DNA of 64,000 nucleotides from Dendrobates tinctorius (Eukaryota). Both the position numbers and the translations under genes were made by a program. The stretch is from positions 7,564,001 through 7,628,000 of the forward strand of contig NW_027361709.1 of assembly GCF_039654945.1 (NCBI RefSeq), in the 5' to 3' direction. Positions 5,215-43,709 of this stretch are shown piece by piece. Within the stretch, counting starts at the first letter, position 1. Every line of letters begins with the position of its first letter. The notes beneath the pieces were generated by a model that saw only the letters and a program-made list of their open reading frames with translations, was not told where the DNA came from and ran no database searches.

Positions 5215-5220
5215 AATAAA
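5215..5220 (+). terminator. Polyadenylation signal of the SLC26A6-like gene
   Basis: AATAAA about 180 nt after the stop, followed by T/GT-rich sequence. Confidence 0.7.
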
Positions 5221-5519
5221 GTCTGTTCTTTTATTCTTACTCCCGGTTACTGTTTTATGTTCTCATTTCCTGATGCTGCAGTTTGAAGATCTTGGGCCTC
5301 GTCACTAACATTACGACATAACAGGGGGTTCTCTTCCAATATGTGTATTTATGGCTTTTCATTAAGCTTAAAAATGTAGGATTGCACTGGTGCCCATCAG
5401 AGGCTTAGCTAGGGGTTCAGCTCAGCGGGGCAAAACATCTAAGTGGATCCTTAACCGGTAATCCAGTATTCTGCACTCCTATTGTCCTCCATACAGTAAC
5501 AATCCTTTCCAGGCTGCGG

Positions 5520-6340: not shown

Positions 6341-6597
6341 GTGAGACTCACCTGTACCTGTTTTGACCGGACAACCCCCTTTAAGGGCAGGTGCCCATAC
6401 ACAGATGCGCAAGGCTGGCTGGGATGACAAATCTTTCCACAAAAGGGTTTCTCCATCCTTTTTTCTCACGTTTGTAAAACTGGTCTCATTGTGTTTGCTT
6501 TGGAGTTTTGCGTTGTTTTTTTTTCAGTAAAGAACAATGCCCAAAACTGCTTCAATGGGTGGATGTGTCCCAAAACTGTGGTTGAGAACAACCACAA

Positions 6598-6635
<38 letters not shown>

Positions 6636-7919: not shown

Positions 7920-8125
7920 AAGTCACGTGCTCCCCGCACCTCATCACCTAGCAACTGCTGCTGGGGCCTGGGCATTCTTTACGGCATGGCCACCAAGCAT
8001 CCAATCAGCATTCAGCTTACGTTCTTGGAGGCTGAAGTATTCTGTTTTGTGATAGGCTGGAAGGATTCAGCGGAAACACGTGACAGACCCGGAAGTGCAG
8101 CTGTGAAGAAAGAAAACGTGTGAGT
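7920..8125 (+). promoter_or_regulatory. Probable WDR6 promoter and non-coding first exon
   Basis: E-boxes CACGTG near 7924 and 8077, CCAAT at 8001, ETS/GABP site CCGGAAGTG at 8089-8097, donor gtgagt at 8120 pairing with the acceptor before 8684. Confidence 0.55.
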
Positions 8126-8742
8126 ATGACTGACAGGCAGCTCAGTGGTCAGATGACAAAGTGGATGTGGAACATCGGACGATATTTGTATCATGGTAGA
8201 AGAGAGGCAGAGGATTAGTAACAGTACGGCACGGAGCAGTGGGGTAGCTCGTGTCTCTACAGGACATGCTGTGACTTGTGGTTCCTCCACCTGATCTACC
8301 TTTCCTAATGGCCACATAATAGTCATAAAGTTGTACTTGAGGTCTGCATGTTGTGCAGTAGTGAGCAATCTGGCTACAAAACTACAGCTCCCAGCAGGGC
8401 AGGGTTGGAAATGTATTTTTTTCCCAAAAGCCTCAAGTTAATGATCAACAAATACATATTATAAATAAATATAGGGGTTATAACAGCCTGACGGCTTCTA
8501 TAAACAGCGCCACCTCTGTCCACAGGATGTGTGTGACATTACAGCTCCACTCACATCAAGAGAACTGAGCTACACAACCCACAGCCTCTGAGCAATGTGA
8601 AGAGGAGACGCGCATCTGATTATAGATACAATTTTTGATTGAGGCATTGATGTTGATATTTGTTTTTTTTTTTTATCATCTAGATTAATGGAGGCATCTG
8701 GGGGAGACCTCTCTGGATGAGGCATCACACGGCAACACCAAG

Positions 8743-8812
8743 ATGGAGTCACAGCTGCTGGTGGCTCCCATTACTGCACTGGAGTTTGTGGGCCACCATC
8801 ATCTCCTGGCTG
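8743..8812 (+). CDS. wdr6: WDR6 first coding exon (MESQLLVAPITALEFVGHHHLLAG)
   Basis: Kozak AAGATGG; resembles human LILLPVTGLECVGDRLLAG; donor gtaagt in phase 1 joins GEGP in the next exon. Confidence 0.9.
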
Positions 8813-8856
8813 GTAAGTTCTAGAGGATAATGTTTGCATGATACATGCTGTATGTC

Positions 8857-8907
<51 letters not shown>

Positions 8908-9135
8908 CACAGTGGATCAGTGGTTAGCACTGTTGCTTTGCAGCACTGGGAACCCAAATTCATATCCAGCAAATGGCCACATCTGCAGGGAGCTTGTATG
9001 TCTTTCCCTTGTTGGCATGGACTTCCTCCCACTCCAAAGACATTCTGTGAATCCAGATTGTGAGCCTCAATGGTGACATTGATGATGTCTGTAAAGAGCT
9101 GTGGGATTAATGGTGCTATGAGTGCGTAAAATAAT
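8908..9135 (+). mobile_element. tRNA-headed SINE with L2-like tail (amphibian SINE2/V-SINE type), degenerate
   Basis: A-box-like TGGATCAGTGGTTAGCAC head; tail CTGTAAAGAGCTGTGG...GGTGCTAT resembles the L2 3' end at 56713-56770. Confidence 0.65.
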
Positions 9136-9178
9136 TATCTATCTCTATATATATATAATATATATACACACACAGACA

Positions 9179-10659
9179 CAGTGAGAAAAATAAGTATTTG
9201 ATATACTGCCGATTTTGCAAGTTGTTCCCACTTACAAAGAATCTAGAGTCTGTAATTCTTATCGTAGGTACACTTCTACTGAGAGAGACAGTCTAAAACC
9301 AGAAAATCACATTGTATGATTGTTACATAATTTGCGTTTTATTGCATGAAATAAGTATTTGATACAATAGAAAAACAGAACTTAATATTTGGTCCAGAAA
9401 CATTTGTTTGCAGTTGCAGAGGTCAGACGTTTTCTGTAGTTCTTGACCAAGTTTTCACACATTGCAGCAGGGATTTTGGCCCCCTCCTCCATACAGATCT
9501 TCTCCAGATCTTTTCAGGTTTCGGGGCTGTTGCTAGTCAACTTTGAGTTTCAGCTCCCTCCAAAGATTTTCTATTGGGTTCAGGTCTGGAGACTGGCTAA
9601 GACACTCCAGGACCTTGAAATGCTTCGTACAGAGCCTCTCCTTAGCTGCCTTGGCTGTGTGTTTCGGGTCATTGTCATGCTGGAAGACGCAGCCACAACC
9701 CATCTTTATTGGTCTTACTGAGGGGAGGTTATTGGCCAAAATCTCACTATACATGACCCCATTCACATCCTCCCTTCAATATGGTGCAGTCATCATGTCC
9801 CCTTTGCAGAAAAGCACCCCCCAAAGTATGTTTTCCCCACCATGCTTCACGGTTGGGACGGTGTTCTTGGGGTTGTACTCATCCTTCTTCCACAAAACAC
9901 AGCAAGTAGAGTTGATACCAAAAAGTTCTATTTTGGTCTCATCTAACCACATGATCTTCTCCCATGCCTCCTCTGGATCATCCAGATGGTCATTGGCGAA
10001 CTTCAAGTGCTGGTGTGAGCAGGAGGACCTTGCATGCCCTGCAGGATTTTATTCCATGACAGTGTAGTGTGTTACTAATGGTAATATTTGAGACTGTGGT
10101 CCCAGCTCTCTTCAGGTCATTGACCAGGACCTCCTGTGTAGTTCTGGGCTGATTTCTGACCTTTCTCAGAATCATCCTTACCCCATGAGGCGAGATCTTG
10201 CATGGAGCCCCTGACTGAGGAAAATTGGCAGTTATTTTGTGTTTCTTCCATTTTCTAATAATTGTGCCAACAGTTGTTGCCTTCTCACCAAGCTGCTTGC
10301 CTTGTGTCCTGTAGTGCATCCCAGCCTTGTGCAGCTCTTTGATCTTGGCCATGGTGGAGAGGTTGGAGTGTGTGGACAGGTGTCTTTTATACAGGTGCAA
10401 TTAATACACGTAATGAGTGCAGAGTAGAAGGGCTTGTTAAAGAAAACTTAACAGGTCTTTGAGAGCCAGAATTCTTGCTGGTTGGTCTGTGATCAAATAC
10501 TTATTTCATGCAATAAAATGCAATTTAATTATGTAAAAACCATACAATTGTCTCTCACAGGTGAGGTGTACCTAAGATAAAAATAACAGACCTCTCCATT
10601 CTTTGTAGGTGGGAAAACTAGCAAAATCGGCAGTGTATCAAATACTTTTTCCCCCATTG
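9179..10659 (-). mobile_element. Tc1/mariner DNA transposon with long TIRs and frameshifted transposase
   Basis: TIRs CAGTGAGAAAAATAAGTATTTGAT / ATCAAATACTTTTTCCCCCATTG; fragments [23 protein letters not shown] and [11 protein letters not shown] (DD34E) on the minus strand. Confidence 0.93.
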
Positions 10660-13613: not shown

Positions 13614-15942
13614 GTGAAGGTCCTAATTTGACCATTTATAGCTTGAGAAGCAGCAGTTTGACCCCTTGGAAGCTTAAGGAGACTGTACTCAATGGTTACG
13701 TCATTCATGGAATAAAGACCTTCAGTACAGAAAACTCAGACTGTGCCATCTTGTGTGTTTTTGGAAGTAAGGGTCTTATTGTCCTGAATTTCTGCAGCAG
13801 AGATCAAGGAATAAGCCTGTCCAGAGTCTGTGAGCTCCGAGAGCTGCATGATTGGATCTGGGACATTCAGTGGCTTGGAGATGACTCGCAGTCCACTGCT
13901 TATCTCGGCATAGCCTTAGGTCACAATTCTGTAGCTTGCTATGACTACAGGAAAGGAAAAGTCCTGAAAGAAATTCACTGCTCAGAAAAATGTATCTTGT
14001 ATTCTGCTCATTTTGTGGGGAGAACCTGGAAAGAGCTTACGTTGATCTCTGGGACTGTGTTCAACCAGCTTGTCATATGGGGAATGTGTGACCAAACCAA
14101 TGAAGAGGGAAGAGTAGAACCTCGGAGGAGAATAAGTGGGCACAATGGTGTAATTTTCAGCATTTACTATGAAGCACAAAGGGGCATTTTGGCTTCGGCC
14201 TCTGATGACCGCAGCCTCAGGGTGTGGAAAGTGGGCAGCCTTACTAGCTGCGATCCAGAAGTCCAGTGTCTTCTCGAATTGTATGGGCACCAAGCTAGAG
14301 TGTGGTCAGTCAGACTATTCTCAGACAACATAATCAGTATCGGAGAGGACTCGGCTTGTATCGTGTGGAGCGGCAGTGGTGATATCATCCATAACTTCAA
14401 AGGTCACAGAGGTCGAGGCATAAGAGCTGTCGCCATCCAAGATCAGCTTAGTTTGGTGGCAACTGGTGGAGCAGACTGTGGTATCCGTCTTTGGCAAATT
14501 AAAGAAAAATCTTCCCCCTCTTGTAACATATTAAATTTAAATTTTGATGCCTCCAAATATGTTGGGACCCCCAAGGCAGTCATATTGGCGGATATCAATT
14601 GTCTTATGATCATGACGGACTTGGGTTTTATTTACACACATGATTTTATCAGCAAGGAATGGACCTTGGTACTGGAGGATAGGAACTATAAATCTTACGG
14701 TCTCCTAGAAGTAGTCAGATTGGGCGATTTCACCTTATGTTCCATAGGTAACATAACCGGCAGTGTTAAGATCTTCTCACTTTCATCTTCTCGGACTTGC
14801 CAGGAGTTCAAGCACCATGAAGGTAAAGTACACAGTCTTACATGGGTTGCCCCGTCTCCATCTTTAGACACTTGCAGCCTGTTTTCTTCTGGTCCTAATG
14901 GAATAATGGTTTGGCTGGAGGTCACCTGTGTGTCTGGAGATATCACATCTGTCACAGAGAACTGTAGGTTTCTTCTACCCATCTGCAAGCAAAGGTGGCA
15001 CACCAGCATTGCACTTGTACCTGAAGAAGGTTTGATTGTCTGTGGTGACCGTAGAGGATCATTAATGCTTTTTCAGAATTTGCAAAGCGCCCACAACCCT
15101 CCACAAGGACATGAAAAAGAGCCAGTCCATGTTCTGTTTGGCCTTCATGGCAAATTAGGTGTCACATCAGTGGAGTACCATAATGGCTTTGTGTACAGCA
15201 GTGGTCGAGATGGTTTTTGCCGCCAGTTGAAGGTGGAAGGACACCAGTTGGTCCTGCTCCGAAAATTCAAGTCTTGCAAAGGGATGGAGTGGATCGAAAG
15301 CGTGTCCTTTGTCCCCGACGGAGATTTACACATCCTTGGTTTCCACTCTACAGACTTTGTGGTGTGGAGTACAAGAACTAATGAGAAGCTGCTTTGTGTT
15401 TCTTGCGGTGGAGGACACAGGTCTTGGAGCTACAAGAAGGACGGTACAAAGGAAGTTTTCACCTACATTAAATCTGGTGATGTGTTCGCCCACCATGGTC
15501 AACAGGTTGAAAGAATCCAGAATGTAGTAAAGGAACCCTTACATGGCAGGGAACTGACAAGTGTTAAGTATGTCGGGAGTGTTAACAATTGTAGCGAGGA
15601 TTGTATTGACATCCTTATCACAGGCAGTGAAGACACCACCGTTAATATCTGGGCCTTCTGTTCCAAACACTTTTATTGCCTTTCAACCATACATGACCAT
15701 CTCTCCAGTGTGAAAACTTTGGCTTTAGCAGGGACTGAATATAAAGATGGTGTCCTCTCTACTCTCCTGTTCACCGCCGGGGGCAGAGCTCAGATTGAGG
15801 TTTATCGGTTGTTGATTCAAGCGAAAGAGATTAATAGCAGCGTTACCTGTCAAGTCACCCACTTAGCTTCCCACCGACTGGGCGAACACTGGGATAGAAT
15901 CAAGAATAAACACCGGATGCTAAAGATGGATCCGGAAACCAG
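13614..15942 (+). CDS. wdr6: WDR6 large coding exon (WD40 repeats; Trm734/FTSJ1 cofactor)
   Basis: 2329-nt open exon with WD40 motifs (GHNGVIFS..ASASDDRSLRVW, GHQARVW, CGGGHRSW, LHGRE, DPETR); cctag acceptor and gtaatg donor. Confidence 0.97.
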
Positions 15943-18294: not shown

Positions 18295-20140
18295 CACACA
18301 CAGCTCACATCCAGCCTAATATTATTGAGAGAAACACACAGACCTCAAATCCAGTCTATATTACTGGGTGGGACACATAGACCTCATGTCTAGCTTATAT
18401 TACTGGGAGGAAAACACAGACCTCTTATCCACCCTATATTTTTTTTTTAATCAGATACATTTTTATTTATGATAACAATTACATCATATACATGACATCA
18501 AGCAATTGTTCACATATAAACATGTTTTTATAAACAAAAACAAAACTCCTCCCTCCCTTTTCCCCCCCTATCCCCCCTCCGAGATCCCTTCAGTGCCTTC
18601 CCCGTTCCTCGTCCAGTACTCTTTCCAACATCCATATATAGTTATGTAATGTGAATATCTTCCATATCCCAATACGTCCCTCCCACCCCTCTAACTCCAT
18701 TCTACCCATGGCTGCCATATCTTGTGAAACACCTCAAGTTTATTTCTCTTAGTGTAAATACTTTTTTCCAATGAAATTATATGCTCCGCCTGCGCAAGAA
18801 AGTCCCGTCTAGTCGGAGGCTCCTCTCTGATCCAAAACCGGGCAATCAATTTCCTTGCTATGAACAACAGTCTTGCAATCGCCAGTTTGACCATAGCCGC
18901 CGCTGCCAATTCTTCCACAAAGCCTAAAATACAGATCAAAGGGTCTCTGGGGATTACACATTTATATATCCATTCGATCCGATTCAGTACAACTGTCCAG
19001 TATGTAGACAATCTAGGGCAACACCACAACATGTGCATCATATCTGCCCGTTCCTGCGAACACCGTGGACAATCGGAATCAGACCTCAAACCCATCTTGA
19101 ACAATCTATCAGGAGTTCTGTAAGCTCTATGAATTACGTACAGCTGAGACATCCTCCCAGGTTCGCTCATAGAAATCTTAGGCACATATTCTAAAATAGA
19201 TTCCCATCTATCATCACTTATTTCTCCCAATTCAGCCTCCCATTTCACTCTAGCCTTGATGGGATGACTGACTAGAAATGTAAATAATAAATCTCTATAC
19301 AGTTCTGAGATTGCCCCCTTCGTCTCGCTGTTCCCCAAAATGGAGGCCAGCGTGACATCAATCTGGACCTCAACAGGCCTCCTCCGACATTGCGACCGAT
19401 ACGCATGCTGAATTCTTTTATAATGATACATATTTGAGTGTGGAAGCTGGAACTCTGATTGTAGCTCCATGAATGATTTAAGTCTCCCCTGACCCACAAG
19501 CTGACCCATCCGTCTGATTCCTGCCTCTCTCCAAAGCCCAAATCCCTCCATTCGCTGGAATTCTTGTAAATTTATGTTATCCCACACTGGAGAGTATTTA
19601 GTAAGGCCCGTGACACCCCTAATCTGTTTAACTTTCTCCCATACCTTATGAATAAGGAGAACCGTAGGAAACCTAGAGCCAAATTTTAAAAACTGCCCCC
19701 CTTTCAGGCTCTCTCCCAAAGGCCATTTCCCAAACAGCTTTCTCAAACTACTGGGCGATTGTTCCTGTCCCGTCTCCTCTCCCCATCCTCCCATATGTTG
19801 ACATTGTGCTGCTAAAAAATATACCCAGGGATTAGGAAGCGCCATCCACCCTATATTACTGGGAGAGAAACGCAGCTCATATTCAGCCTATATTACTGGG
19901 AAGAAAATGCAGACCTTGTATCCAGCCTATAGTACTGAGAGAGAGACACAGATCTTGCTTCCAGCCTATATTACTGGAAGAAATATACAGCCCATATAAA
20001 GCTTACATTACTGGGTGGAATGCACAGACCTCGCATCCAACTAATATTACCGAAAGATACACACAGACCTCGCATTCAGCCTATAATACTGAAAGAGAAA
20101 ATAGACATTGAATCCAGCCTATAATACTGGGAGAGACACT
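18295..20140. repeat. Diverged minisatellite of about 38-40 bp, split by an L1 insertion
   Basis: Units like CACAGACCTC..ATCCAGCCTATATTACTGGGAGAGAA at about 18295-18440 and 19844-20140. Confidence 0.75.
18441..19843 (-). mobile_element. 5'-truncated L1-clade LINE (ORF2 C-terminus, 3' UTR, polyA)
   Basis: ORF 18691-19845 with CPRC-x8-H-x4-C zinc knuckle; G-rich 3' UTR and polyA (T run from 18439); 14-bp TSD ATCCACCCTATATT (18427-18440, 19844-19857). Confidence 0.92.
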
Positions 20141-21470
20141 CCCATAAGATAAAAAGCTGAAACTTGGTTCGAGCGACAAATGGCATAACGGGGAGTCTGA
20201 GAATGAATGAAGAAATGAAGATTGCAAACCTAAAACTAGCGGAATTTTATTGTCTAAAGGTAAATAGTTACATAGGTAAAACTCCTTTTTTTTTGCCATG
20301 TCAAAGGTGTCCATACCTTAAGGGTTGTGAAACATGATATATAAAACCATAAGTTCTAAAATAACAGTCACTGTGAAACATTTACGCATTTGTTGGTGTC
20401 TGTCGGCAGGGGGCTGCATTCTTTTCTGAGGAGGGCAGGTTGTACTGCGCTGGCCTACAATAGTTATTCTGGTGCACGCTTGTTCTCATAGGGGAGGTAG
20501 TGAGAGCGCATTAGTACTAGCATACACTAAACAGGCTCATTATACATTTATTAAGTGCTGAGTGATTTCCCCAGAGATCATTTGATCCATGATACACAAA
20601 CAACATATGGCTTAGGTACGGGGGTTTCTGTGCAGCCAAAATCCTGGCTGTTTAATTAGGAAGATGGCACTTTCAATGTGGACTGTAGTGTGGTTTAGCA
20701 GATTGAGGTGTGACACTGCCAGGTATAAAATACTGCAATACAGTCGTATAGCAATATATTACAAAAGCAATCAGAGGATTGCATGTTCAAGTCAGCTACT
20801 GGGACTATAAACAAAAAAAGGGGACAAAAAATCCTCTCTGCATCTGGAAAGTACAGCATAATATAAACATTATTCTGCATGCTAAATCACCATAATTATA
20901 AGAACCTACAAAATAAAGCTAGAAAGTCAGTAGTGAAGTCGCCTTTTTTTATAAATGCACATTCCCCCAAAAAATATTGAATATATCATATCTACGCCCC
21001 CAAAAGGGGCACCCACTGATCCTGAGAATGGGGATCTGAAATGCCTTGTTGGTATAGGGCTGTGGCACCGCCATTCTGTACATTGTTTATGAGGCTGCTA
21101 GATACCAGAGTACAGCGCTCAGCGATATATGACAGTCCTATAGGACGTCAGCGGAGAGGCGGCACACACGGGCATTTCAGAGCACCATTCTCAGGATCCA
21201 TGGGACGCACAGTGAGCTGCAAATTGTCACCCATCCTGTCCTGTTGATATTATATGATCATTTGCTTAATTAGGTGTTACCCTTCAACCTTTTTCTTTAA
21301 TTAGAGGAAGACTCTAGACAAAACTGATGATGTGTTATAGTCATTGCCAGCACTCGGGGTGGAGCATGATGCACAGATTTGGAGAAAACTGCACTTGGTA
21401 GAATGCTGTGTCTACAATTTTCCTGGGGTAATTGATAATGAATCGTAACAAGAACCTCTGTTCCTTACAG

Positions 21471-22079: not shown

Positions 22080-23970
22080 GTATAGTAGTTATATTCTTGT
22101 ACATAGGGGCAGTATTATAGTAGTTATATTCTTGTACATAGGGGCAGTATTATAGTAGTTATATTCTTGTATATAGGGGCAGTATTATAGTAGTTATATT
22201 GTATATAGGGGCAGTATTATAGTAGTTATATTCTTGTACATAGGAGCAGTATTATAGTAGTTATATTCTTGTACATAGGGGCAGTATTATAGTAGTTACA
22301 TTCTTGTACATAAAGGGCAGTATTATAGTAGTTATATTCTTGTACATAGGGGGCAGTATTATAGTAGTTATAATCTTGTACATAGGGGCAGTATTATAGT
22401 AGTTACATTCTTGTACATAGGGGGCAGTATTATAGTAGTTACATTCTTGTACATAAAGGGCAGTATTATAGTAGTTATATTCTTGTACATAGGGGCAGTA
22501 TTATAGTAGTTACATTCTTGTATATAGGGGCAGTATTATAGTAGTTATATTCTTGTACATAGGGGGCGGTATCATAGTAGTTATATTCTTGTACATAGGA
22601 GCAGTATTATAGTAGTCATATTCTTGTATATAGGGGCAGTATTATAGTAGTTATATTCTTGTATATAGGGGCAGTATTATAGTAGTTATATTCTTGTACA
22701 TAGGGGGCAGTATTATAGTAGATATATTCTTGCACATAGGAGCAGTATTATAGTAGTTATATTGTACATAGGGGCAGTATTATAGTAGATATATTCTTGT
22801 ACATAGGGGCAGTATTATAGTAGATATATTCTTGTACATAGGGGCAGTATTATAGTAGTTATATTCTTGTACATAGGGGCAGTATTATAGTAGTTATATT
22901 CTTGTACATAGGGGGCAGTATTATAGTAGTTATATTCTTGTACATAGGGGCAGTATTATAGTAATTATATTCTTGTATATAGGGGCAGTATTATAGTAGT
23001 TATATTCTTGTACATAGGAGGCAGTATTATAGTAGTTACATTCTTGTACATAAAGGGCAGTATTATAGTAGTTATATTCTTATACATAGGGGCAGTATTA
23101 TAGTAGTTATATTCTTGTATATAGGGGCAGTATTATAGTAGTTATATTCTTGTACATAGGGGGCGGTATTATAGTAGTTATATTCTTGTACATAGGGGGC
23201 GGTATTATAGTAGTTATATTCTTGTACATAGGAGCAGTATTATAGTAGTTATATTCTTGTATATAGGGGCAGTATTATAGTAGTTATATTCTTGTACATA
23301 GGGGGCAGTATTATTGTAGTTATATTCTTGTACATAGGGGCAGTATTATAGTAGTTATATTCTTGTACATAGGAGCAGTATTATAGTAGTTATATTCTTG
23401 TACATAGGGGGCGGTATTATAGTAGTTATATTCTTGTACATAGGAGCAGTATTATAGTAGTTATATTCTTGTATATAGGGGCAGTATTATAGTAGTTATA
23501 TTCTTGTACATAGGAGCAGTATTATAGTAGTTATATTCTTGTACATAGGAGCAGTATTATAGTAGTTATATTCTTGTATATAGGGGCAGTATTATAGTAG
23601 TTATATTCTTGTACATAGGGGCAGTATTATAGTAGATATATTCTTGTATATAGGGGCAGTATTATAGTAGATATATTCTTGTATATAGGGGCAGTATTAT
23701 AGTAGATATATTCTTGTGCATAGGGAGAAGTATTATAGTAGTTATATTCTTGTACATAGGGGCAGTATTATAGTAGTTATGTTCTTGTATATAGGGGCAG
23801 TATTATAGTAGTTATATTCTTGTACATAGGGGCAGTATTATAGTAGTTATATTCTTGTACATAGGGGGCAGTATTATAGTAGTTATATTTTTGAACATAG
23901 GGGGCAGTATTATAGTAGTTATATTTTTGAACATAGGGGGCAGTATTATAGTAGTTATTTTCTTGTATAT
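22080..23970. repeat. 35-36 bp AT-rich satellite array A, about 54 copies
   Basis: Unit ATAGGGGCAGTATTATAGTAGTTATATTCTTGTAC read directly. Confidence 0.97.
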
Positions 23971-24449
23971 AGTGCTACCTTTGGTACTTAAGAAGTGTCT
24001 GGATTGTCAGAATTCTATAGTACTTTCCATATTCTGGAGATTTTATGGAAACGGGTATGTGACCTTTATAGTAGGAACGCCCTGAGCTTGTCTTTGTATG
24101 TGGAACTGAATCTGATCCTCTGGTTCCCATTCACTGGCTGTTGCTCTCTTGACAGCTTTTATAATGGATACAAATGTGCATTGTCAATGCCAGCCTGAAT
24201 TATTGAGTATTTGCCACCCATGAAAGGCTGATCTACTCCCAACCCAAGAGGCTTAATGAATAATTCATTTCTGTTGATATGAGCCCTCAGCAGAAACCTC
24301 CATGGTTCACCAGTGACACTTGGACAATGAACTTGGATAGTTGTCCATGCAGAGCATTGGACAAACTTTTCTTAGCAATGACCCCAAAATGCTGAACTAT
24401 TTGCTTGGGTCGTCTGAAGACCAAAACAGACCAGAATCCACCTTCTGCA

Positions 24450-24671
24450 ATGCACCAAAATAATATCTCCAAGAAATGGAGGTCAGATAGAGGGAACTCT
24501 AAGAGGGTGACAGTGATGGTGCCAGGTCATGAGGCTGAAGGGGGTACACGTGTGGCACCGTTGACCCCCAGGCTTTGCCTAAAGACAGAACATTCTCCAG
24601 CTTTGTCTCCAAAAAGCCTGAGTGATTGGAAGAACAACAGAGGAGCTCAGCATGAAAACTCGCTACAGAAG
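24450..24671 (+). CDS. Uncharacterised gene, putative coding exon 1 (MHQNNISKKWRSD...ENSLQK)
   Basis: First in-frame ATG after TGA at 24393; strong donor AAG|gtaaat in phase 0. Confidence 0.55.
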
Positions 24672-25361
24672 GTAAATGCATTTTTCTTGTGTAATTTTAT
24701 ATTAAGCTTGATTGGTGGTAGTCCCCTGTAATGGAGGAGAGAAGGGTGATGGCGGAGTCGCCCTCTACTGTCATGCCGTTTCCTAGTTTGTTGGAGGTAA
24801 TCCTGGATGAAGACTAATACGGCCGCGCGCTTATCATTGCCCAGGTAGGTCTGACCCAGATTTCCTTAGTATTTGGGTGGCATAATCGTCTATAGAGGTT
24901 GTCTCAGGATCCTATTTTCATGATTGCACCTTTACCTTGCCTCCTGGATTCTTGCTTGCCAAGAGGCAATGCCCTCCTGATGATTGACAGTTCAGAGCAG
25001 TGGCATGGATGAGCGGCTAGTCCAGACTGTGCGCTTTCTGATGCTGCTAGCAGAGGCAGCCTTACCTCTGCTGCATGGGAGCAGTGCTGGGCAATGAAGC
25101 TGTCAGGATCCCGCCATCTATCCTCAAGCTTCAGAGCAGTGTTTGCAAGCTACATCTAGCAACCACCTTACAAGAGCGCGCACCGTGTCTAGAATACCTA
25201 GGCAATGAGCAGTAACCTAAAGAGGTAAACTGCAAAGTTGTTTGTTGTTACAAGCACTTTGCAAATTTACCCATTAAATAAGAAGAGACATCCCCTTTAA
25301 GAAGTTGCAATGTGATAAGTTACATGGACTGATTCACACTCAGTCTTATCTTCTATCCCAG

Positions 25362-25470
25362 ATACCAGCTGATGCCAGACGCCCGGACATTGCATTAAAA
25401 GAACATGTGGCTGACAGAGGAAGAGTATGTGCTTTGCCGTTAATCAAGAAAGGAGCAGGAAAGGTTACAG
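25362..25470 (+). CDS. Uncharacterised gene, putative exon 2 (IPADARRPDIALKEHVADRGRVCALPLIKKGAGKVT)
   Basis: ttctatcccag acceptor and CAG|gtatgg donor; 109 nt, which converts phase 0 to the phase 1 required by exon 3. Confidence 0.55.
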
Positions 25471-28042
25471 GTATGGGCTGTGCAGGTGGCATATGGGTCG
25501 GGCGGACATCTTAGCCTATGACACGCTTCCGTGGGGAGATGTTGGGCTTTTAAATGCAGCTGTTGGGGGCATGGAGATGTATCCAGTCAAGCGTGACTTC
25601 GCGCCACTCAAAAAAGGCTTGTCTGGCTCCGACCACAATTGCGCCCTCATTAGGGTGTGCCAGGCACCGCCAGCTGTGATCTTCCATCTGCCGCGTAAGA
25701 AAATCACTGGCACTTGCCAATACCTTTAAGTGACAAGTTCATGTAATGAAGGGGGGCGTCCAGTACAAAGCCTGGCTTCCACTGCACTTGGCATGTTACG
25801 GTGGGTGTCAGTCTCGCCCCTTAGTGCGATGGTTTACATATTATATGTCAAGGGGCGGTAATCGCGCTGCCCCTCTTATTATAAGGGAATCTACTAAAAA
25901 TACATGAAAGGTGCCTACACCTGATGCCAGGTTTATAGTCTAATTTATGCACATTAAATCCGCGTTTCGCCACCTGCTCTTTTATCACCGGCCGTAATGC
26001 TGGAGGCTTCACTGATCTCGTGGCTGCTGCCGGTGTCAGGTATCGGATAGAATTCTGTATTCTAAGAATAGGAAATGAATGAAGGTTAACCTAGAAAATA
26101 TAAGTTGCCATCCTTATTAATAGTGACGGGTAGAAGAAACTTTATTTTTTCTCACGATACTGCCTAAAATAACCCAATTTTTGATACTTTTTTTTTCAGT
26201 GGCAACAGTTTGTAATTGCACATTTTTTCAGGTCTACGAATACGACTGGAAATAAACCATGGAGCTATAAATATATATTTTACCTTATTAAAGGGGATGT
26301 CCAAGACGTTCATACTGATGGACTATCCTTAGAATAGGTCAATATGAGATTCAGGGGTGTCCCACGCTTGGCACCCTCACGATAAACTGCATGTCCTGTA
26401 TCGTCCTGAAATACAAGGTGTATAGAGCCAGAACAGCAGACCAATGTACACGGTGTATTGGCCGCTCTCAGGTGCTGCAGCTCACTTCTCACTTCCCATT
26501 GAAGCGAATGTGATGTAAACTGCAGCACCTGAGAACGAGCACTACATCGTGTGTATGGTGCTGTGCTTCTCAGGGGCTCTACACTGTGTATTTCAGGCTG
26601 CAGCGATACCTGGTAAAAAGATGACCAGTAAGGGTGTCAGACTCTCACTAATCTCATATTGATGTATTATCCTAATTACAGTCCTCAACATTGAAATTGC
26701 AATACCAAGAAGGAAACCTTGTGGAATCATCAAAATCCACTGCTGGCAGCGCCCTTTAAAATTGCCAACAAATCCTGTCCCGGATATGCTCCTTACGAGA
26801 CAAGTCTGGAAACGCTGCAGCCATAGTGCCACGTTTAGGCCATGCAGGCTGCTCACAGTAACACCAGCATCATGTAGCCTGGTGTCGTGTCGAGAATCAG
26901 CTCCTGGGACACTGGAGAAATGGCTGAACCACTGGTTCCACAATTCATCCATTTGTGTATTGCCAATGAAATTAGATGTCACATGCCAAGACTAATGCTT
27001 CAGACAGCAAACAGTCAGGAGGCATGTACACGGATGTGGATGATTTGTCTGCGTGCATTCAGCACAGAACATCCCTCAATCATTAATAACCTAATAGCAG
27101 CAGAGACTGGAAGTGCCGGGATTTCTGTACAAGTCACTTTCTTATCATTTGCAGGTCAGTAACCTGTCCATCTTGTGACTTCCATAACCTCACAAGTTTT
27201 CCTTCATGGTGTTGCAGTTTCAAAGTTAAGGAGTGTAGAAAAATAAAAACACATCTCTTTTGCCCGTTGCAATTTACCTCCATTACATTTATCTATCTTT
27301 GATCATTAAATCCCCTCCCTCTCATTAGGGCTTCTTTTCGCAAAGAAACATCACGGGAATTCTTAGAAAATCCTGAATGTCTGGACATGCTCTTAGATGT
27401 CTCTCATCAAGGCTGCTCCATCATCAGTGTTATTGTGTAGATCAGCATGGTCTCACTGCACTTACCCCCCCCCCTTCAAGTAAAAACGGATTTTTGGTGG
27501 ATATACCAGTCTAATATGTCCAGGAACTAGCCTCATGCTCTGCTGCCAGTTACTTTTTTGCAGTGGGCGGGTTCCTCATAATCAGCATTCTGCCAGGACC
27601 ATGGGTGCTTTAAATTCCTTTCCCCTCGCTTCCCTGCGTACTTTGCTTCTGCCTTTATCAACTGGTTTGCCTGTCCGAAACTAAATGCTTGCCTGTAGAC
27701 AGGGATGCAGGCGCAGAAAAAGACCCCCTCTACTTCACATCCACAGATAAAGATCCACCTCCTCTTACTGCAGCGATAAATACCCGCCACTACCTATAAT
27801 CCTGCAGTTACAGACAGATTACACCTAACAGGCTCAGGACTGCAAGTTAAAGAGAAAAGAGACCTTCCTGTGGCCAGCGTGAGGAATTGGTTTTTCTAGG
27901 GTCATTTTTAAGATTTGGGTCCTCTGCTGTGCGCCACAGGGCAGTGTCCATCTATTATGGGATCTTATATAATGGCGGATATAGACATACAAATCTGAAT
28001 GTTATTTCTTGTTCTTTGACCTAATATCACTCTATCCTCCAG

Positions 28043-28554
28043 CCGTAAGTGTCCGAGATACTGGCAAGAATACGATCCTTACTCCCGCTCTGAAGGCGTC
28101 ACCAACCAGGGGGAAGCAGAAACCTCAGCCCATCCTTGCCAGTGATATGACACCATGGGTCAGAGCATCTCCTTCAGAGACCTCGCTGACATGTCTCCTT
28201 CACAGCATCCCATCTCCAAAGACGTGCCCTGACAACATGGCTAACTGTCCGCAAAGTCAGAAGGAGTCTGCCAACAAGGACAACTGGAGCCCAAAGGCAA
28301 GCCCTTCTGAACAGCCACCATCCAAAGACAAGGGTAATGGCAGAGCTAAACTCAGAGGTCGAAATGGAGTGACCAAGAGACGGTCCTTTAATAAATTCCA
28401 TAATATAAAATTACCTCCGGTCCCTGCAGTCACCGAGCTCAACTTCAGCCGCAACTTCAGCTTTTCATTCTTTGAGTTACCTCAACATCAGGGTCCTCAA
28501 CACTGGCTCCAGCGGCAGAAACACGTGTATATGGTAATGAGACAACTGCAATAA
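28043..28554 (+). CDS. Uncharacterised gene, putative last exon (S/P/K-rich, C-terminal LPPVPAVTELNFSRNFSFSFFELP...MRQLQ*)
   Basis: ctatcctccag acceptor, 512 nt open non-repetitive frame; AATAAA at 28550-28555 overlaps the TAA stop. Confidence 0.65.
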
Positions 28555-28611
28555 ACTGCGGCTATAAATGTGTCCTGCGATGAATTCATGAACAATGTCA
28601 CTTCATTTAAT

Positions 28612-30355
28612 GGGGCAGTATTATAGTAGTTTCCTTCCTGTACATAGGGAGCAGTATTATAGTAGTTATATTCTTGTACATAGGGGGCAGTGTTATAGCA
28701 GTTATATTCTTGTACATAGGAGCAGTATTATAGTAGTTATATTCTTGTACATATGGGACAGTATTATAGTAGTTATATTCTTGTACATAGGAGCAGTATT
28801 ATAGTAGTTATATTCTTGTACATAGGGGCAGTATTATAGTAGTTATATTCTTGTACATAGGGAGCAGTATTATAGTAGTTATATTCTTGTACATAGGGGC
28901 AATATTATAGTAGTTATATTCTTGTACATAGGGGCAGTATTATAGTAGTTATATTCTTGTACATAGGGGCAGTATTATAGTAGTTATATTCTTGTACATA
29001 GGGGCAGTATTATAGTAGTTATATTCTTGTACATAGGGGCAGTATTATAGTAGTAGTTATATTCTTGTACATAGGAGCAGTATTATAGTAGTAGTTATAT
29101 TCTTGTACATAGGGGCAGTATTATAGTAGCTTCATTCCTGTACATAGGGGCAGTGTTATAGTAGTTATATTCCTGTACATAAGGAGCAGTATTATAGTAG
29201 TAATATTCTTGAACATAGGGGCAGTATTATAGTAGCTATATTCTTGTACATAGGGGGCAGTATTATAGTAGTAATATTCTTGTACATAGGAGCAGTATTA
29301 TAGTAGCTATATTCTTGTACATAGGGGGCAGTATTATATTAGTAATATTCTTGTAAATAGGAGCAGTATTATAGTAGCTATATTCTTGAACATAGGGGCA
29401 GTATTATAGTAGTTATTTTCTTGTACATAGGAGCAGTATTATAGTAGTTATATTCTTATAGATAGGAGCAGTATTATAGTAGTTTCATTCCTGTACATGG
29501 GGAGCAGTATTATAGTAGTTATATTCTTGTACATAGGGGCAGTATTATAGTAGTTATATTCGTGTACATAGGGGCAGTATTATAGTAGTTATATTCGTGT
29601 ACATAGGGGCAGTATTATAGTAGTTATATTCGTGTACATAGGGGCAGTATTATAGTAGTTATATTCGTGTACATAGGGGCAGTATTATAGTAGTTATATT
29701 CGTGTACATAGGGGCAGTATTATAGTAGTTATATTCGTGTACATAGGGGGCAGTATTATAGTAGTTATATTCTTGTATATAGGGGCAGTATTATAGTAGT
29801 TATATTCTTGTACATAGGAGCAGTATTATAGTAGTTATATTCTTGTATATAGGGGCAGTATTATAGTAGTTATATTCTTGTACATAGGAGCAGTATTATA
29901 GTAGTTATATTCTTGTACATAGGAGCAGTATTATAGTAGTTATATTCTTGTATATAGGGGCAGTATTACAGTAGTTATATTCTTGTACATAGGAGCAGTA
30001 TTATAGTAGTTATATTCTTGTATATAGGGGCAGTATTACAGTAGTTATATTCTTGCACATAGGAGGCAGTATTATAGTAGTTATATTCTTGTACATATCA
30101 GCAGTATTATAGTAGTTATATTCTTGTATATAGGGGCAGTATTATAGTAGTTATATTCCTGTACATAGGGGGCAGTATTATAGCAGGTATATTCTTGTAC
30201 ATAGGGGGCAGTATTATAGTAGTTATATTCCTGTACATAGAGGGCAGTATTATAGTAGTTCTATTCTTGTACATAGAGGGCAGTATTATAGTAGTAATAT
30301 TCTTGTACATAGGAGAAGTATTACAGTTTTTTCTTGTATATAGGGGGAAGTATTA
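28612..30355. repeat. 35-36 bp AT-rich satellite array B, about 49 copies, same unit and orientation as array A
   Basis: Same unit as 22080-23970. Confidence 0.97.
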
Positions 30356-30500
30356 TAATACTTAAACTGTTGAATAACTTTTGATTCTTAATCCTTAGAG
30401 GTTAATAGTCCCTACATTGTATGATGTATACTTCATGCATACATTACATTTATCAGCTATCCAAGTAAAGTAAGACCACATCTTTCTTAAATAAATGCAC

Positions 30501-31985: not shown

Positions 31986-32369
31986 TTAAGGCCTGTTTCA
32001 CACATCAGTTTTTGTCCATCAGTCAAAATCCGCCGTTTTGCAAAAAGAACGGATCCGCCATTTTTTTGGGCTGATCCGTTTTTTTTCCCATCGAGTTGCA
32101 TTACCGGCGGATCTTGTCGGATGGCCATCTGTTTTTTTGCGGATCCGCCAAAATTTTGACGTCCGCCGACATGCCCGAACGGTCCATGCAGCGTTTTTTC
32201 AGGCGGCAGGATCCGCACTTCTCACAGCGCATGGCTGAAAGACTTCACTCAGCCGAAAATTTAACCCTAAACTCTGTTCTGGCGGCTGGAAAATCTCTCT
32301 CCCTAGTGTATAATTGGGGGGGGGGGCTGGAAGTTTCACCAGTGTGGGCATATCTGTAATACTGTCTAG

Positions 32370-33195
32370 TGTGATACTACCTGCTGAGCCGCGTATCTAA
32401 TCCTCTCCTGTGTGATACTGCCTGCTGAGCCGCGTATCTAATCCTCTCCCGTGTGATACTGCCTGCTGAGCCGTGTATCTAATCCTCTCCCGTGTGATAC
32501 TGACTGCTGAGCCGTGTATCTAATCCTCTCCCGTGTGATACTGTCTGCTGAGCCGTGTATCTAATCCTCTCCCGTGTGATACTGTCTGCTGAGCCGTGTA
32601 TCTAATCCTCTCCCGTGTGATACTGACTGCAGAGCCGTGTATCTAATCCTCTCCCGTGTGATACTGACTGCAGAGCCGTGTATCTAATCCTCTCCCGTGT
32701 GATACTGACTGCTGAGCCGTGTATCTAATCCTCTCCCGTGTGATACTGACTGCTGAGCCCTGTATCTAATCCTCTCCCGTGTGATACTGACTGCAGACCC
32801 GTGTATCTAATCCTCTCCCGTGTGATACTGACTGCTGAGCCGTGTATCTAATCCTCTCCCGTGTGATACTGTCTGCTGAGCCGTGTATCTAATCCTCTCC
32901 CGTGTGATACTGTCTGCTGAGCCGTGTGTCTAATCCTCTCCCGTGTGATACTGTCTGCTGAGCCGTGTATCCAATCCTCTCGTGTGATACTGACTGCTGA
33001 ACCGTGTATCCAATCCTCTCGTGTGATACTGACTGCTGAACCGTGTATCTATTCCTATCCTGTGTGATACTGTCTGCTGAGCCGTGTATCTAATCCTCTC
33101 CTGCGTGATACTGTCTGCTGAGCCGTGTATCTAATCCTCTCCTGCGTGATACTGTCTGCTGAGCCGTGTATCTAATTCTCTGCCGTGTGATACTG
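32370..33195. repeat. 41-bp minisatellite, about 20 copies
   Basis: Unit GTGTGATACTG(T/A)CTGCTGAGCCGTGTATCTAATCCTCTCCC. Confidence 0.95.
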
Positions 33196-33551: not shown

Positions 33552-35357
33552 TCTTTGCATGCAAAGTCTGGATCAGAACAGGCCATCAATCAGCAGAAAT
33601 GTTTCCTGGATTTCTGTGCTGCTGTCTCCCTGCTCCTCCCCCATATATCTCCCTCTGTGCCCCCCATAGACCAGCGCACTGCTTTCCTGAAATACTGTGT
33701 GCTGCTGTCACTGCTCCCTCTACCATATATCTCTCTGTGTGCCCCCCATAGACCAGCACACTGCTCTCCTGAAATACTCTGTGCTGCTGTCACCCTGCTC
33801 CTCCACCATATATCTCTCTGTGTGCCCCCCATAGACCAGCGCACTGCTTTCCTGAAATACTGTGTGCTGCTGTCACTCTGCTCCCTCTACCATATATCTG
33901 TGTGCCCCCCATAGACCAGCACACTGCTCTCCTGAAATACTCTGTGCTGCTGTCACCCTGCTCCTCCACCATATATCTCTCTGTGTGCCCCCCATAGACC
34001 AGCACACTGCTCTCCTGAAATACTCTGTGCTGCTGTCACCCTGTTCCTCCACCATATATCTGTGTGCCCCCCATAGACCAGCACACTGCTCTCCTGAAAT
34101 ACTCTGGCTGCTGTCACCCTGCTCCTCCTCCACCATATATCTCCCTCTGTGCCCCCCATAGACCAGCACACTGCTCTCCTGAAATACTCTGTGCTGCTGT
34201 CACCCTGCTCCTCCACCATATATCTCCCTCTGTGCCCCCCATAGACCAGCACACTGCTCTCCTGAAATACTGTGCTGCTGTCACCCTGCTCCCTCCACCA
34301 TATATCTCTCTCTGTGCCCCCCATAGACCAGCACACTACTCTCCTGAAATACTGTGTGCTGCTGTCACCCTGCTCCTCCACCATATATCTTTGTGTGCCC
34401 CCCATAGACCAGCACACTGCTCTCCTGAAATACTCTGTGCTGCTGTCACCCTGCTCCCTCCACCATATATCTCTCTGTGACCCCCCATAGACCAGCACAC
34501 TGCTCTCCTGAAATACTGTGTGCTGCTGTCACTCTGCTCCTTCTACCATATATCTCTCTGTGTGCCCCCATAGACCAGCGCACTGCTCTCCTGAAATACT
34601 GTGTGCTGCTGTCACTCTGCTCCCTCTACCATATATCTCTCTGTGTGCCCCCCATAGACCAGCACACTGCTCTCCTGAAATACTCTGTGCTGCTGTCACC
34701 CTGCTCCCTCCACCATATATCTCCCTCTGTGCCCCCCATAGACCAGCGCACTGCTCTCCTGAAATACTGTGTGCTGCTGTCACTCTGCTCCCTCTACCAT
34801 ATATCTCTCTGTGTGACACCCCATAGACCAGCACACTGCTCTCCTGAAATACTGTGCTGCTGTCTCCCTGCTCCTCCCCCACACATCTCCCTCTGTGCCC
34901 CCCATAGACCAGCACACTGCTCTCCTGAAATACTGTGTGCTGCTGTCACTCTGCTCCCTCTACCATATATCTCTCTGTGTGCCCCCCATAGACCAGCACA
35001 CTGCTCTCCTGAAATACTCTGTGCTGCTGCCACCCTGCTTCCAGAATCCTTGCTGCCTGCCATCCTCGGTGACCGGAGACCCCATTCCTCTCCTCAGATC
35101 CTGTCCTGGCGATGTGTGAAAGCGAGGCGACAGGGGCCTGATATATGGAGGAAGGAGCAGGGTGACAGCAGCACAGAGTATTTCAGGAGAGCAGTGTGCT
35201 GGTCTGTGGGGGGCGCCCTGTTCGGTGCCAGGGATTGTACATAGAGCGCTGTGTTTTATACACATGGATGGACCGTCTTCTTGTCTGCTCCACAGAAATC
35301 CAGGAAACATTTCTGCTGATTGATGACCTGTTCTGATCCAGACTTTACATGAAAAGA
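33552..35357. repeat. Tandem repeat of about 80-83 bp (about 17 copies) enclosed by about 66-bp inverted arms
   Basis: Unit CCCCCATAGACCAGCACACTGCTCTCCTGAAATACT...; 33552-33618 is the near reverse complement of 35291-35357; one inverted unit at about 35140-35212. Confidence 0.88.
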
Positions 35358-41654: not shown

Positions 41655-43709
41655 CAGTGGTCTCCAACCTTTTTTGCACCAGGGACCGGTTTCAAGCAAG
41701 ACCATTCTTCCATGGCCCGGCAGGGCGGGGCTTTGGTCATAAGGGGGCGAGGCTATGGACGCAGTTGTAGTGTAGCAGTGCATACTTATAATTAAATAAC
41801 TTTTATAATGTGACTCAACTCACCATAGGTTTTGAATGAGTGCTCCATCACCCCCTTCTCCCCATCATTGCCTTCACCCCATCACTGCCATCTCTCCATC
41901 ATTGCCTTCAATCCATCACTGCTGTCTCCCCATCATTGCCTTCACCCCATCACTCCCCTCTCCCCATCATTGCCTTCACCCCATCACTGCTGTCTCCCCA
42001 TCATTGCCTTCACCCCATCACTGCTGTCTCCCCATCATTGCCTTCACCCCATCACTGCTGTCACCCCATCACTGCTGTCTCCCCATCATTGCCTTCACCC
42101 CATCACTCCTCTCCCCATCATTGCCTTCACCCCATCACTCCCTTCTCCCCATCATTGCCTTCACCCCATCACTCCCCTCTCCCCATCATTGCCTTTACCC
42201 CATCATTGCCTTCACCCCATCACTGCCGTCTCTCCATCATTGCCTTCACCCCATCACTGCTGTCTCCCCATCATTGCCTTCACCCCATCACTGCTGTCTC
42301 CCCATCATTGCCTTCACCCCATCACTCCCCTCTCCCCATCATTGCCTTCACCCCATCACTGCTGTCTCCCCATCATTGCCTTCTCCCCATCACTCCCTTC
42401 TCCCCATCATTGCCTTCACCCCATCACTGCTGTCTCCCCATCATTGCCTTCACCCCATCACTCCCCTCTCCCCATCATTGCCTTTACCCCATCATTGCCT
42501 TCACCCCATCACTGCCGTCTGTCCATCATTGCCTTCACCCCATCACTGCCGTCTGTCCATCATTGCCTTCACCCCATCACTGCCGTCTCCCCATCATTGA
42601 CTTCACCCCATCACTGCCGTCTCCCCATCATTGCCTTCACCCCATCACTCCCTTCTCCCCATCATTGCCTTCACCCCATCACTGCTGTCTCCCCATCATT
42701 GCCTTCACCCCATCACTGCTGTCTCCCCATCATTGCATTCACCCCATCACTGCTGTCTCCTCATCATTGCCTTCATCCCATCACTCCCCTCTCCCCATCA
42801 TTGCCTTCACCCCATCACTGCTGTCTCCCCATCATTGCCTTCACCCCATCACTCCCCTCTCCCCATCATTGCCTTCACCCCATCACTGCTGTCTCCCCAT
42901 CATTGCCTTCACCCCATCACTGCTGTCTCCCCATCATTGCCTTCACCCCATCACTCCCCTCTCCCCATCATTGCCTTCACCCCATCACTGCTGTCTCCCC
43001 ATCATTGCCTTCACCCCATCACTCCCCTCTCCCCATCATTGCCTTCACCCCATCACTGCTGTCTCCCCATCATTGCCTTCATCCCATCACTCCCCTCTCC
43101 CCATCATTGCCTTCACCCCATCACTGCTGTCTCCCCATCATTGCCTTCACCCCATCACTCCCGTCTCTCCATCACTCCCCTCATGGTCTTCTCCTCATGT
43201 CCCCATCTCCTCCAGGGCCAGGCTACACAAACACAGACCAACGCACACACACACACACACACAAAACACACACACACACGGCCAGGCTACACACACACAA
43301 AAAACACACACACACACAGGGCCAGGCTACCTACACACACACACACACACACACACACGGCCAGGCTACACACACAGACACCACCTCTCTCCTCTCACCT
43401 GTCGCAGCATCGCCCGCGCTTCCTCGCTCTGACACAGCAGCGGCGCGCTCCTCTCTGTGTCAGTCAGAGACAGGAAGCGCGGGCGGCGGGCAGGAAGCTG
43501 GACGGGTCCTTGCAGCTCCGCTCCTGCTATTCCCTCTTGCAGGCAGCGGAGCTGCTTGATCGCTCCCTGGCCGCCGCTATGAACTGCTGCGCGCCGCCCC
43601 AGCCCCCACTACGCCACTGACCGCCCCTGGCTCCCCTTGTGTCCGCGGACCGGCAAGGGCACTGCAGCGGCCCGGTGCTGGGCCGCGGACCGGCGGTTGG
43701 GGACCCCTG
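41655..43709. mobile_element. hAT (Charlie-like) MITE carrying a minisatellite and (CA)n
   Basis: 8-bp TSD CTTTAGAG (41647-41654, 43710-43717); TIR CAGTGGTCTCCAACC / GGTTGGGGACCCCTG. Confidence 0.92.
41846..43183. repeat. 34-bp (2 x 17-bp) C-rich minisatellite
   Basis: Alternating CCCCATCATTGCCTTCA and CCCCATCACTGCTGTCT subunits. Confidence 0.95.

What the first reader, a model, noticed from the sequence alone, without database searches (positions are those of the whole stretch)
24450..28555. Unrecognised 3-exon, about 280-aa gene between WDR6 and DALRD3
Seen: three non-repetitive open segments (24450-24671, 25362-25470, 28043-28554) have canonical splice sites with interlocking phases (0, then 1) and total 843 nt. 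Exons 1 and 3 cannot be joined directly, and the 109-nt middle exon corrects the frame. The product is basic, S/P-rich and probably disordered, but ends in an aromatic-rich tail (KLPPVPAVTELNFSRNFSFSFFELPQHQGPQHWLQRQKHVYMVMRQLQ) that looks constrained. Known: human WDR6 and DALRD3 lie directly tail-to-tail with no protein gene between them. Inference: a lineage-restricted gene, or one lost in mammals, of a family I do not recognise.
Basis: partly seen in the sequence, partly recalled or inferred. Interest (0 to 1): 0.75.

Follow-up and report, generated by a model that had tools for sequence, protein, structure and literature searches.

The report
Unstudied ancient gene beside WDR6
The three-exon gene between WDR6 and DALRD3 is real and already sits in public annotation as an "uncharacterized protein", and it belongs to an unnamed, unstudied family that runs from lamprey and sharks to frogs and lizards but was not found in mammals or birds.

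Summary
Exons 24450-24671, 25362-25470 and 28043-28554 (+ strand, phases 0 then 1, 843 nt) encode a 280-aa protein. It is identical to an NCBI/UniRef entry, "uncharacterized protein [Dendrobates tinctorius]", so annotation pipelines already recognise the gene.

It is not lineage-restricted. Relatives occur in at least 17 frogs, a salamander, many squamates, lungfish, coelacanth, sturgeon, gar, teleosts including zebrafish, sharks, a ray and a lamprey. The order WDR6 > gene > DALRD3 and the 3-exon, phase 0/1 structure hold from catshark to lizard.

Purifying selection is clear. Omega is 0.14-0.39 among poison frogs. In the C-terminal motif, synonymous sites are saturated while the residues are kept out to shark. 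A ranid transcript contig shows the three exons spliced.

No mammal, bird, turtle or crocodilian protein was found. No Pfam, NCBIfam or PDB match and no paper was found. AlphaFold2 predicts a disordered protein ending in one confident helix.

Most likely it is a basic, disordered linear-motif adaptor whose active part is the C-terminal 48 residues. The partner and function are unknown.

The scan did not report this gene on other DNA.

The parts
24450..24671 (+). Coding exon 1 (74 codons, ATG at 24450, ends in phase 0). It encodes a basic, poorly conserved N-terminal region.
   Evidence: It is identical to residues 1-74 of P0001. Omega is 0.16-0.30 against two other poison frogs.
25362..25470 (+). 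Coding exon 2 (109 nt, phase 0 to phase 1). It carries the conserved LPLI(K/R)K island at 25428-25457.
   Evidence: A middle exon with the same phases exists in frogs, lizard, catshark and gar. The L-P-x-I island is seen across the family.
28043..28554 (+). Coding exon 3 (512 nt including the TAA stop at 28552-28554). It encodes residues 111-280.
   Evidence: Exon 3 alone finds 18 proteins at E-values down to 2e-109.
28147..28200 (+). Conserved island M-T-P-W-V-x-x-S-P-S-E-x-S-L (residues 146-163). P148 and W149 are invariant in 37 vertebrate sequences.
28342..28401 (+). Basic patch (residues 211-230, including TKRR). This is a candidate nuclear-localisation or charge-dependent binding stretch.
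   Evidence: K213, R217, K222, R223 and K228 are invariant in frogs. The functional reading is inference only.
28408..28551 (+). C-terminal module (residues 233-280). It consists of LPPxP, the aromatic stretch L-x-F-S-R-x-F-x-F-S-F-F-E-L-P, and an amphipathic helix (262-279, at 28495-28548).
   Evidence: L243, F245, F249, F251, S252, F254, L256 and P257 are invariant in 46 sequences from lamprey to frog. The helix has pLDDT 90-95. Synonymous sites are saturated while pN stays at 0.04-0.22.
28550..28555 (+). AATAAA overlapping the stop codon. This is a candidate polyadenylation signal giving a very short 3' UTR ahead of the satellite.
   Evidence: Its use was not tested.
22081..23972 (.). Upstream 35-bp satellite array between the WDR6 stop and this gene.
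   Evidence: It is also present upstream of the gene in Ranitomeya and Anomaloglossus.
28612..30364 (.). Downstream array of the same 35-bp satellite, starting 57 nt after the stop codon.

Best explanation
This is an intact, selectively maintained protein-coding gene of Dendrobates tinctorius, already annotated as an uncharacterized 280-aa protein. It is the frog orthologue of an unnamed single-copy vertebrate gene that has sat directly downstream of WDR6, on the same strand, since at least the jawed-vertebrate ancestor. A lamprey relative lies next to an NDUFAF3-like gene. The family was not found in mammals, birds, turtles or crocodilians.

Shown: the exon structure, the identity to the deposited model, the orthologues, the synteny, the conserved intron phases, purifying selection, and a spliced transcript in a ranid frog.

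Inferred (about 40% confidence for this mechanistic part): the product is a strongly basic, Ser/Pro-rich, intrinsically disordered protein that acts as a linear-motif adaptor or regulator. Four short conserved islands would dock onto partners. The functional core would be the C-terminal 48 residues: a polyproline LPPxP, an alternating-aromatic stretch FSRxFxFSFFELP that would form a strand only on a partner or in self-association, and an amphipathic helix. The near-invariant R-x-F-[S/T] inside that stretch fits a basophilic-kinase site, so binding may be phospho-regulated.
For: Gene model and annotation
- The exons and phases are as described and are reproduced from the deposited protein.
- P0001 is 100% identical, 280 aa, and named 'uncharacterized protein [Dendrobates tinctorius]'. 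The window equals GCA_039654945.1 contig JAYMGB010000118.1.

Distribution and synteny
- Relatives were found and named: frogs down to Ascaphus, Pleurodeles, squamates, lungfish, coelacanth, sturgeon, paddlefish, gar, zebrafish and other teleosts, sharks, a ray and a river lamprey.
- The order WDR6 > gene > DALRD3 holds in Dendrobates, Xenopus, Ranitomeya, Zootoca and catshark.
- The order is WDR6 > gene > SLC26A in gar and zebrafish.
- Three exons with phases 0 and 1 occur in eight species, from catshark to frogs.

Selection and expression
- Omega is 0.39 against Ranitomeya and 0.14 against Anomaloglossus.
- In the 24-codon motif block, pS is 0.56-0.79 and pN is 0.04-0.22 for the five deeper comparisons, Lithobates to catshark and gar.
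- Transcript contig L004 (1193 bp, uninterrupted ORF) maps onto the Lithobates pipiens genome as three coding exons across introns of about 18 kb and 5 kb. Its own 5' UTR is contiguous with exon 1.

Structure and composition
- The whole-protein AlphaFold2 model has mean pLDDT 54. It is disordered apart from a confident helix at 262-279, with only a 4-residue low-confidence helix at 160-163 besides.
- The C-terminal 66 residues alone give pLDDT 73 with the same helix.
- The protein has 47 K+R against 20 D+E, and 24% S+P+T.
Against:
- The mechanism rests on composition, conservation pattern and a low-confidence structure model only. No partner, localisation or phenotype is known, and no known motif class was matched by a test.
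- Absence from mammals and archosaurs rests on predicted proteomes. An unannotated or very divergent copy would be missed.
- The lamprey model has different intron phases, and its neighbours are not WDR6 and DALRD3.
Confidence: 0.85

Rival explanations
1. The gene is a very divergent orthologue of a named mammalian gene that has moved or changed beyond recognition, so it is neither lost in mammals nor unnamed.
For: Most of the protein is disordered and evolves fast: about 25% mean column identity across vertebrates. Some sources give spurious names to family members, such as formin-like, WIPF3 and synapsin-2, which shows how little anchors the sequence outside the tail.
Against: The C-terminal motif is nearly invariant from lamprey to frog, so a mammalian copy should be detectable. 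None appeared at E<=1e-3 among 1.84 billion representatives with no length limit. There was also no Pfam, NCBIfam or PDB hit.
Confidence: 0.08
2. The three exons are alternative 3'-terminal exons of WDR6 (a read-through isoform), not an independent gene.
For: The gene lies on the same strand, directly downstream of WDR6, in every jawed vertebrate examined. One eel gene model fuses the two (P0046).
Against: A conserved ATG and N-terminus (MHQN...) exist in most frogs. The ranid transcript contig has its own 166-nt 5' UTR contiguous with exon 1, about 5.3 kb past the WDR6 model, and carries no WDR6 sequence. NCBI pipelines model the genes separately in more than 30 species. In this window a 1.9-kb satellite array lies between them.
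Confidence: 0.04
3. The gene is frog-restricted or otherwise lineage-restricted.
For: The first word search, with exon 3 alone, returned only frogs.
Against: Profile searches find a salamander, squamates, lungfish, coelacanth, ray-finned fishes, sharks and a lamprey, in conserved synteny and with the same exon phases.
Confidence: 0.01
4. These are chance open frames, or a conserved non-coding element that only looks coding.
For: None found. The composition is low-complexity in places.
Against: Omega is well below 1. Third codon positions diverge while the first and second are kept in the motif block. The ORFs are intact in dozens of species. A spliced transcript exists.
Confidence: 0.01

Closest known systems
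NCBI/UniRef predicted 'uncharacterized protein' entries. Examples: the Dendrobates tinctorius 280-aa model, Xenopus laevis LOC121403124, X. tropicalis XENTR_v10012809, Anolis LOC103277983, Latimeria LOC106706539, and a Danio rerio 205-aa uncharacterized protein.
   Same: They are the same gene and its orthologues. The Dendrobates entry is 100% identical, and the others share the C-terminal module, the exon phases and the position next to WDR6.
   Different: Nothing differs. These entries are computational predictions with no name, no curated family and no paper found.
WIPF3, formin-like and synapsin-2 names that some sources attach to fish members
   Same: Proline-rich, low-complexity stretches in the teleost proteins.
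   Different: No WH2, FH2 or synapsin domain, and no other Pfam domain, is detected in the members scanned. The fish members that carry these names were not themselves scanned against Pfam. I take the names to be composition artefacts, not homology.
Disordered linear-motif adaptors and regulators in general: short conserved islands in a fast-evolving chain, with a terminal helix that folds on a partner
   Same: This is what the gene works like. About 90% of the chain is predicted disordered, there are four narrow conservation islands, and there is one confident C-terminal helix.
   Different: This is a resemblance of architecture only. No specific motif class (SH3 ligand, FFAT, LIR, 14-3-3) was tested or matched. 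I recalled these from memory as leads.

Membership tests
Unnamed WDR6-adjacent vertebrate family (orthologues of X. laevis LOC121403124 and Anolis LOC103277983) | C-terminal module LPPx..L-x-F-S-R-x-F-x-F-S-F-F-E-L-P followed by an amphipathic helix | tested here: met
   Residues 233-280 of the window's product. These columns are invariant in 46 sequences.
Unnamed WDR6-adjacent vertebrate family (orthologues of X. laevis LOC121403124 and Anolis LOC103277983) | Three coding exons with intron phases 0 then 1 | tested here: met
   The same phases occur in the window, four other frogs, Zootoca, catshark and gar. The lamprey model differs.
Unnamed WDR6-adjacent vertebrate family (orthologues of X. 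laevis LOC121403124 and Anolis LOC103277983) | Position directly downstream of WDR6 on the same strand | tested here: met
Any curated protein family (Pfam-A 2025, NCBIfam 20.0) or solved structure | A profile match at or near the curated threshold | tested here: not met
   There were no Pfam hits for the exons or for P0001 and P0014. Only sub-threshold noise appeared for two other members. NCBIfam gave no hits. PDB profile searches gave only E of about 1-2 to viral capsid chains.
WIP/WASP-interacting or formin families (names given to fish members by some sources) | WH2 or FH2 domain | tested here: not met
   No such Pfam domain was found in the members scanned.
INKA/FAM212 (considered from memory because INKA1 lies in the same human chromosome band) | Match to the FAM212/Inka-box Pfam family | tested here: not met
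   There was no Pfam match of any kind at E<=10.

The most novel reading that the evidence does not exclude
The gene is a founding member of an undescribed, single-copy, vertebrate-wide protein family more than 450 million years old. It stays beside WDR6 and carries a new, almost invariant C-terminal interaction module (LPPxP, FSRxFxFSFFELP, helix). It was lost independently, or once in a stem lineage with later retention, in mammals and in the archosaur and turtle lines, while amphibians, squamates and fishes keep it under purifying selection. This implies a conserved cellular partner whose regulation differs in mammals.
Probability: 0.6. Interest if true: 0.5.

Novelty: already known. Interest (0 to 1): 0.4.

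Why it matters
The gene's existence is not news, because public annotation holds the identical model. What remains open is the family. It is an ancient vertebrate gene with a 24-residue stretch almost unchanged from lamprey to frog. It has no name, no curated domain, no structure and no paper that I could find, and I saw no copy in mammals or birds. Zebrafish and Xenopus both carry it, so its function is directly testable by knock-out and by pull-down with the C-terminal peptide. It adds one clean, synteny-anchored case to the list of old vertebrate genes missing from mammals, and a candidate new linear-motif module.

Tried and rejected
- **RNA-seq junction test in Dendrobates:** I used a ranid transcript contig instead.
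- **Joined spliced model:** I did not type or join it. Searches used the exons by reference and then the database protein P0001, which is the same sequence under its own id.
- **Family and structure libraries:** Pfam, NCBIfam and PDB sequence searches gave nothing.
- **Fold search:** not run. The models consist of one helix plus disorder, and matches to such models are meaningless.
- **Literature:** searches for the motif string, for six LOC identifiers and for WDR6+DALRD3+synteny found no papers.
- **Non-coding RNA and intronic ORFs:** Rfam on the whole window gave no family. Four intronic ORFs had no Pfam match.
- **Motif ideas from memory:** class I SH3 ligand at LPPVP, FFAT-like SFFELPE, LIR FFEL, 14-3-3 or basophilic-kinase site RxF[ST], PP1 RVxF at KRVTV, WH2-like LIKK. 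None could be tested, and several fit the consensus poorly, so they are kept as leads only.
- **Contigs L007 and L008:** these proved to be genomic, not spliced, so they are not counted as transcript evidence.
Full report
**Observation**

- Exon 1 is 222 nt, exon 2 is 109 nt, and exon 3 is 512 nt including the TAA stop at 28552-28554. The total is 843 nt.
- Read in the frame that a direct exon 1 to exon 3 join would give, exon 3 is full of stops.
- An exon solver given the deposited protein returns exactly 24450-24671, 25362-25470 and 28043-28554, with phases 0 and 1.

**Identity**

A word search with exon 3, given by reference, returned a 280-aa NCBI/UniRef protein named "uncharacterized protein [Dendrobates tinctorius]" at 100% identity.
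- The contig that encodes it, GCA_039654945.1 JAYMGB010000118.1, is identical to the window over 24 kb.
- The gene is therefore already in public annotation and is not "unrecognised".
- I did not type or join the spliced model for any search. The exons were searched by reference, and after that the database protein id was used.

**Surroundings**
- A WDR6-type beta-propeller gene ends at about 21904 on the + strand. A DALR-domain gene (DALRD3) begins at about 30911 on the - strand.
- The gene is bracketed by two arrays of one 35-bp satellite, at 22081-23972 and 28612-30364.
- An AATAAA overlaps the stop codon.

**Distribution**

Three searches were run: a profile of 14 frog proteins, an exhaustive HMM search of 1.84 billion representative proteins with no length limit, and a third word search with a 37-sequence profile. 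Names came from the cluster look-ups.
- The family is present in frogs down to Ascaphus, and in Pleurodeles.
- It is present in squamates: Podarcis, Zootoca, Hemicordylus, Pogona, Phrynocephalus, Anolis, Varanus, a gecko and a skink.
- It is present in lungfish, coelacanth, paddlefish, sturgeon, gar and many teleosts including Danio rerio.
- It is present in two sharks, a ray and the river lamprey.
- Every entry is "uncharacterized" or "hypothetical", or carries a name that is plainly a proline-richness artefact (formin-like, WIPF3, synapsin-2).
- No mammal, bird, turtle or crocodilian appeared. A few representatives come from unlabelled assembled runs. By sequence they look teleost.

**Synteny and gene structure**
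- The order WDR6(+) > gene(+) > DALRD3(-) holds in Dendrobates, Xenopus tropicalis, Ranitomeya, the lizard Zootoca and the catshark Scyliorhinus.
- Lithobates has WDR6 upstream.
- Gar and zebrafish have WDR6 > gene > an SLC26A transporter.
- The lamprey relative lies beside a DUF498 (NDUFAF3-type) gene. In mammals, NDUFAF3 is the next neighbour of DALRD3; that point is from my own knowledge.
- Three coding exons with phases 0 and 1 recur in all eight jawed vertebrates solved. The lamprey model differs.

**Selection and expression**
- I computed Nei-Gojobori estimates exon by exon, leaving out the split codon. They give omega 0.39 against Ranitomeya (dS 0.14) and 0.14 against Anomaloglossus (dS 0.43).
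- The 24-codon block LPP...FFELP is identical in Ranitomeya and shows only silent changes in Anomaloglossus. In the five deeper comparisons (Lithobates, Xenopus, lizard, catshark, gar) the proportion of synonymous differences is 0.56-0.79 and the non-synonymous proportion is 0.04-0.22. The constraint is therefore on the protein, not on the DNA.
- A 1193-bp contig assembled from run SRR13833756 carries the uninterrupted ORF. It maps to the Lithobates pipiens genome as three coding exons separated by about 18 kb and 5 kb. Its own 5' UTR is contiguous with exon 1 and holds no WDR6 sequence.

**The protein**
- It is basic, with 47 K+R against 20 D+E, and 24% of it is S+P+T.
- Across 37 vertebrate sequences, mean column identity is only 25%. 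Conservation is concentrated in four islands:
  - L-P-L-I in exon 2;
  - M-T-P-W...S-x-S-E-S-S;
  - a basic patch;
  - the C-terminal module.
- In the C-terminal module, L243, F245, F249, F251, S252, F254, L256 and P257 are invariant in 46 sequences. L234, P235, P236, S246, R247, F253, E255, H259 and R268 are nearly invariant.
- The whole-protein AlphaFold2 model has mean pLDDT 54. It is disordered apart from a confident helix at 262-279 (pLDDT 90-95), with only a 4-residue low-confidence helix at 160-163 besides.
- The last 66 residues alone give pLDDT 73 with the same helix and no regular structure in the aromatic stretch.
- There is no Pfam, NCBIfam or PDB relative. No paper was found by motif string, gene identifier or locus.

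**Mechanism (inference)**

The most likely reading is a disordered linear-motif adaptor or regulator. The conserved islands would dock onto partners. The C-terminal 48 residues would be the functional core: a polyproline turn, an alternating-aromatic segment that becomes a strand only against a partner or another copy, and an amphipathic helix.
- The near-invariant R-x-F-[S/T] within that segment fits a basophilic-kinase site.
- The basic patch may serve nuclear import.
- None of this was tested. I give it about 40%.

**Rivals**
- A hidden mammalian orthologue under another name is unlikely, given how invariant the tail is and that the search was exhaustive. It cannot be excluded without genome-level searches.
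- A WDR6 read-through isoform is contradicted by the independent 5' UTR in the ranid transcript and by the separate models in more than 30 species.
- The frog-restricted reading and the chance-ORF reading are refuted.

**Verdict**
The gene is real, of no described family, and apparently absent from mammals. It is not lineage-restricted, and it is not unannotated.
- I rate the gene model as already known, because the identical model is public. The family is unnamed and unstudied, which is where the remaining interest lies.
- The scan's own notes hold nothing on this gene elsewhere.

Noticed in passing
window 22081-23972 and 28612-30364; L005 about 2540-9528 and 13907-15479; L006 about 7383-9294 and 19893-20563; L007 970-1013: Arrays of the same 35-bp satellite, in the same orientation, bracket the gene on both sides. 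The bracket is shared by Ranitomeya and Anomaloglossus. A similar unit follows the stop codon in a more distant hyloid genomic contig. Its origin, and any role such as a boundary or a recombination product, is unexplained.
   Followed up: partly
window 28550-28555: AATAAA overlaps the TAA stop codon (28552-28554). This would give a 3' UTR of only about 20-40 nt ahead of the satellite. The ranid transcript has a 3' UTR of at least 220 nt.
   Followed up: no
window 24405-24449: An in-frame TTG at 24405 lies where the Anomaloglossus model (P0003) has an ATG and 15 extra N-terminal residues. The upstream frame is still open in Dendrobates.
   Followed up: no
L012 11177-13138 (spotted gar): A tandem array with a period of about 37 bp starts inside the last codons of the annotated gar ORF, and the model's odd C-terminal extension runs into it. 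So another species also has a satellite directly 3' of this gene.
   Followed up: no
P0012 (Bufo gargarizans), P0046 (Anguilla anguilla), P0038 (Pleuronectes platessa): The Bufo model loses the C-terminal motif through a frame change. The eel model is fused to WDR6, and the plaice model is fused to an SLC26A transporter. These are probably annotation artefacts, though the Bufo case could be a real disruption.
   Followed up: no
L002 10001-10027 (Xenopus tropicalis) and P0016/P0017: The Xenopus models are about 217 aa, with a 9-codon first exon in place of the 74-89-codon first exon seen in the other frogs, lizard and catshark solved. This could be an alternative first exon or a real N-terminal shortening in pipids.
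   Followed up: no
window 1-64000: No Rfam family reaches its gathering score anywhere in the window, including the DALRD3 region. From memory, mammals host miR-191 and miR-425 in DALRD3. The window also holds many other minisatellite arrays: 386-959, 32369-33195, 33613-35039, 41854-43176, 51361-52355 and 53778-55126.
   Followed up: no
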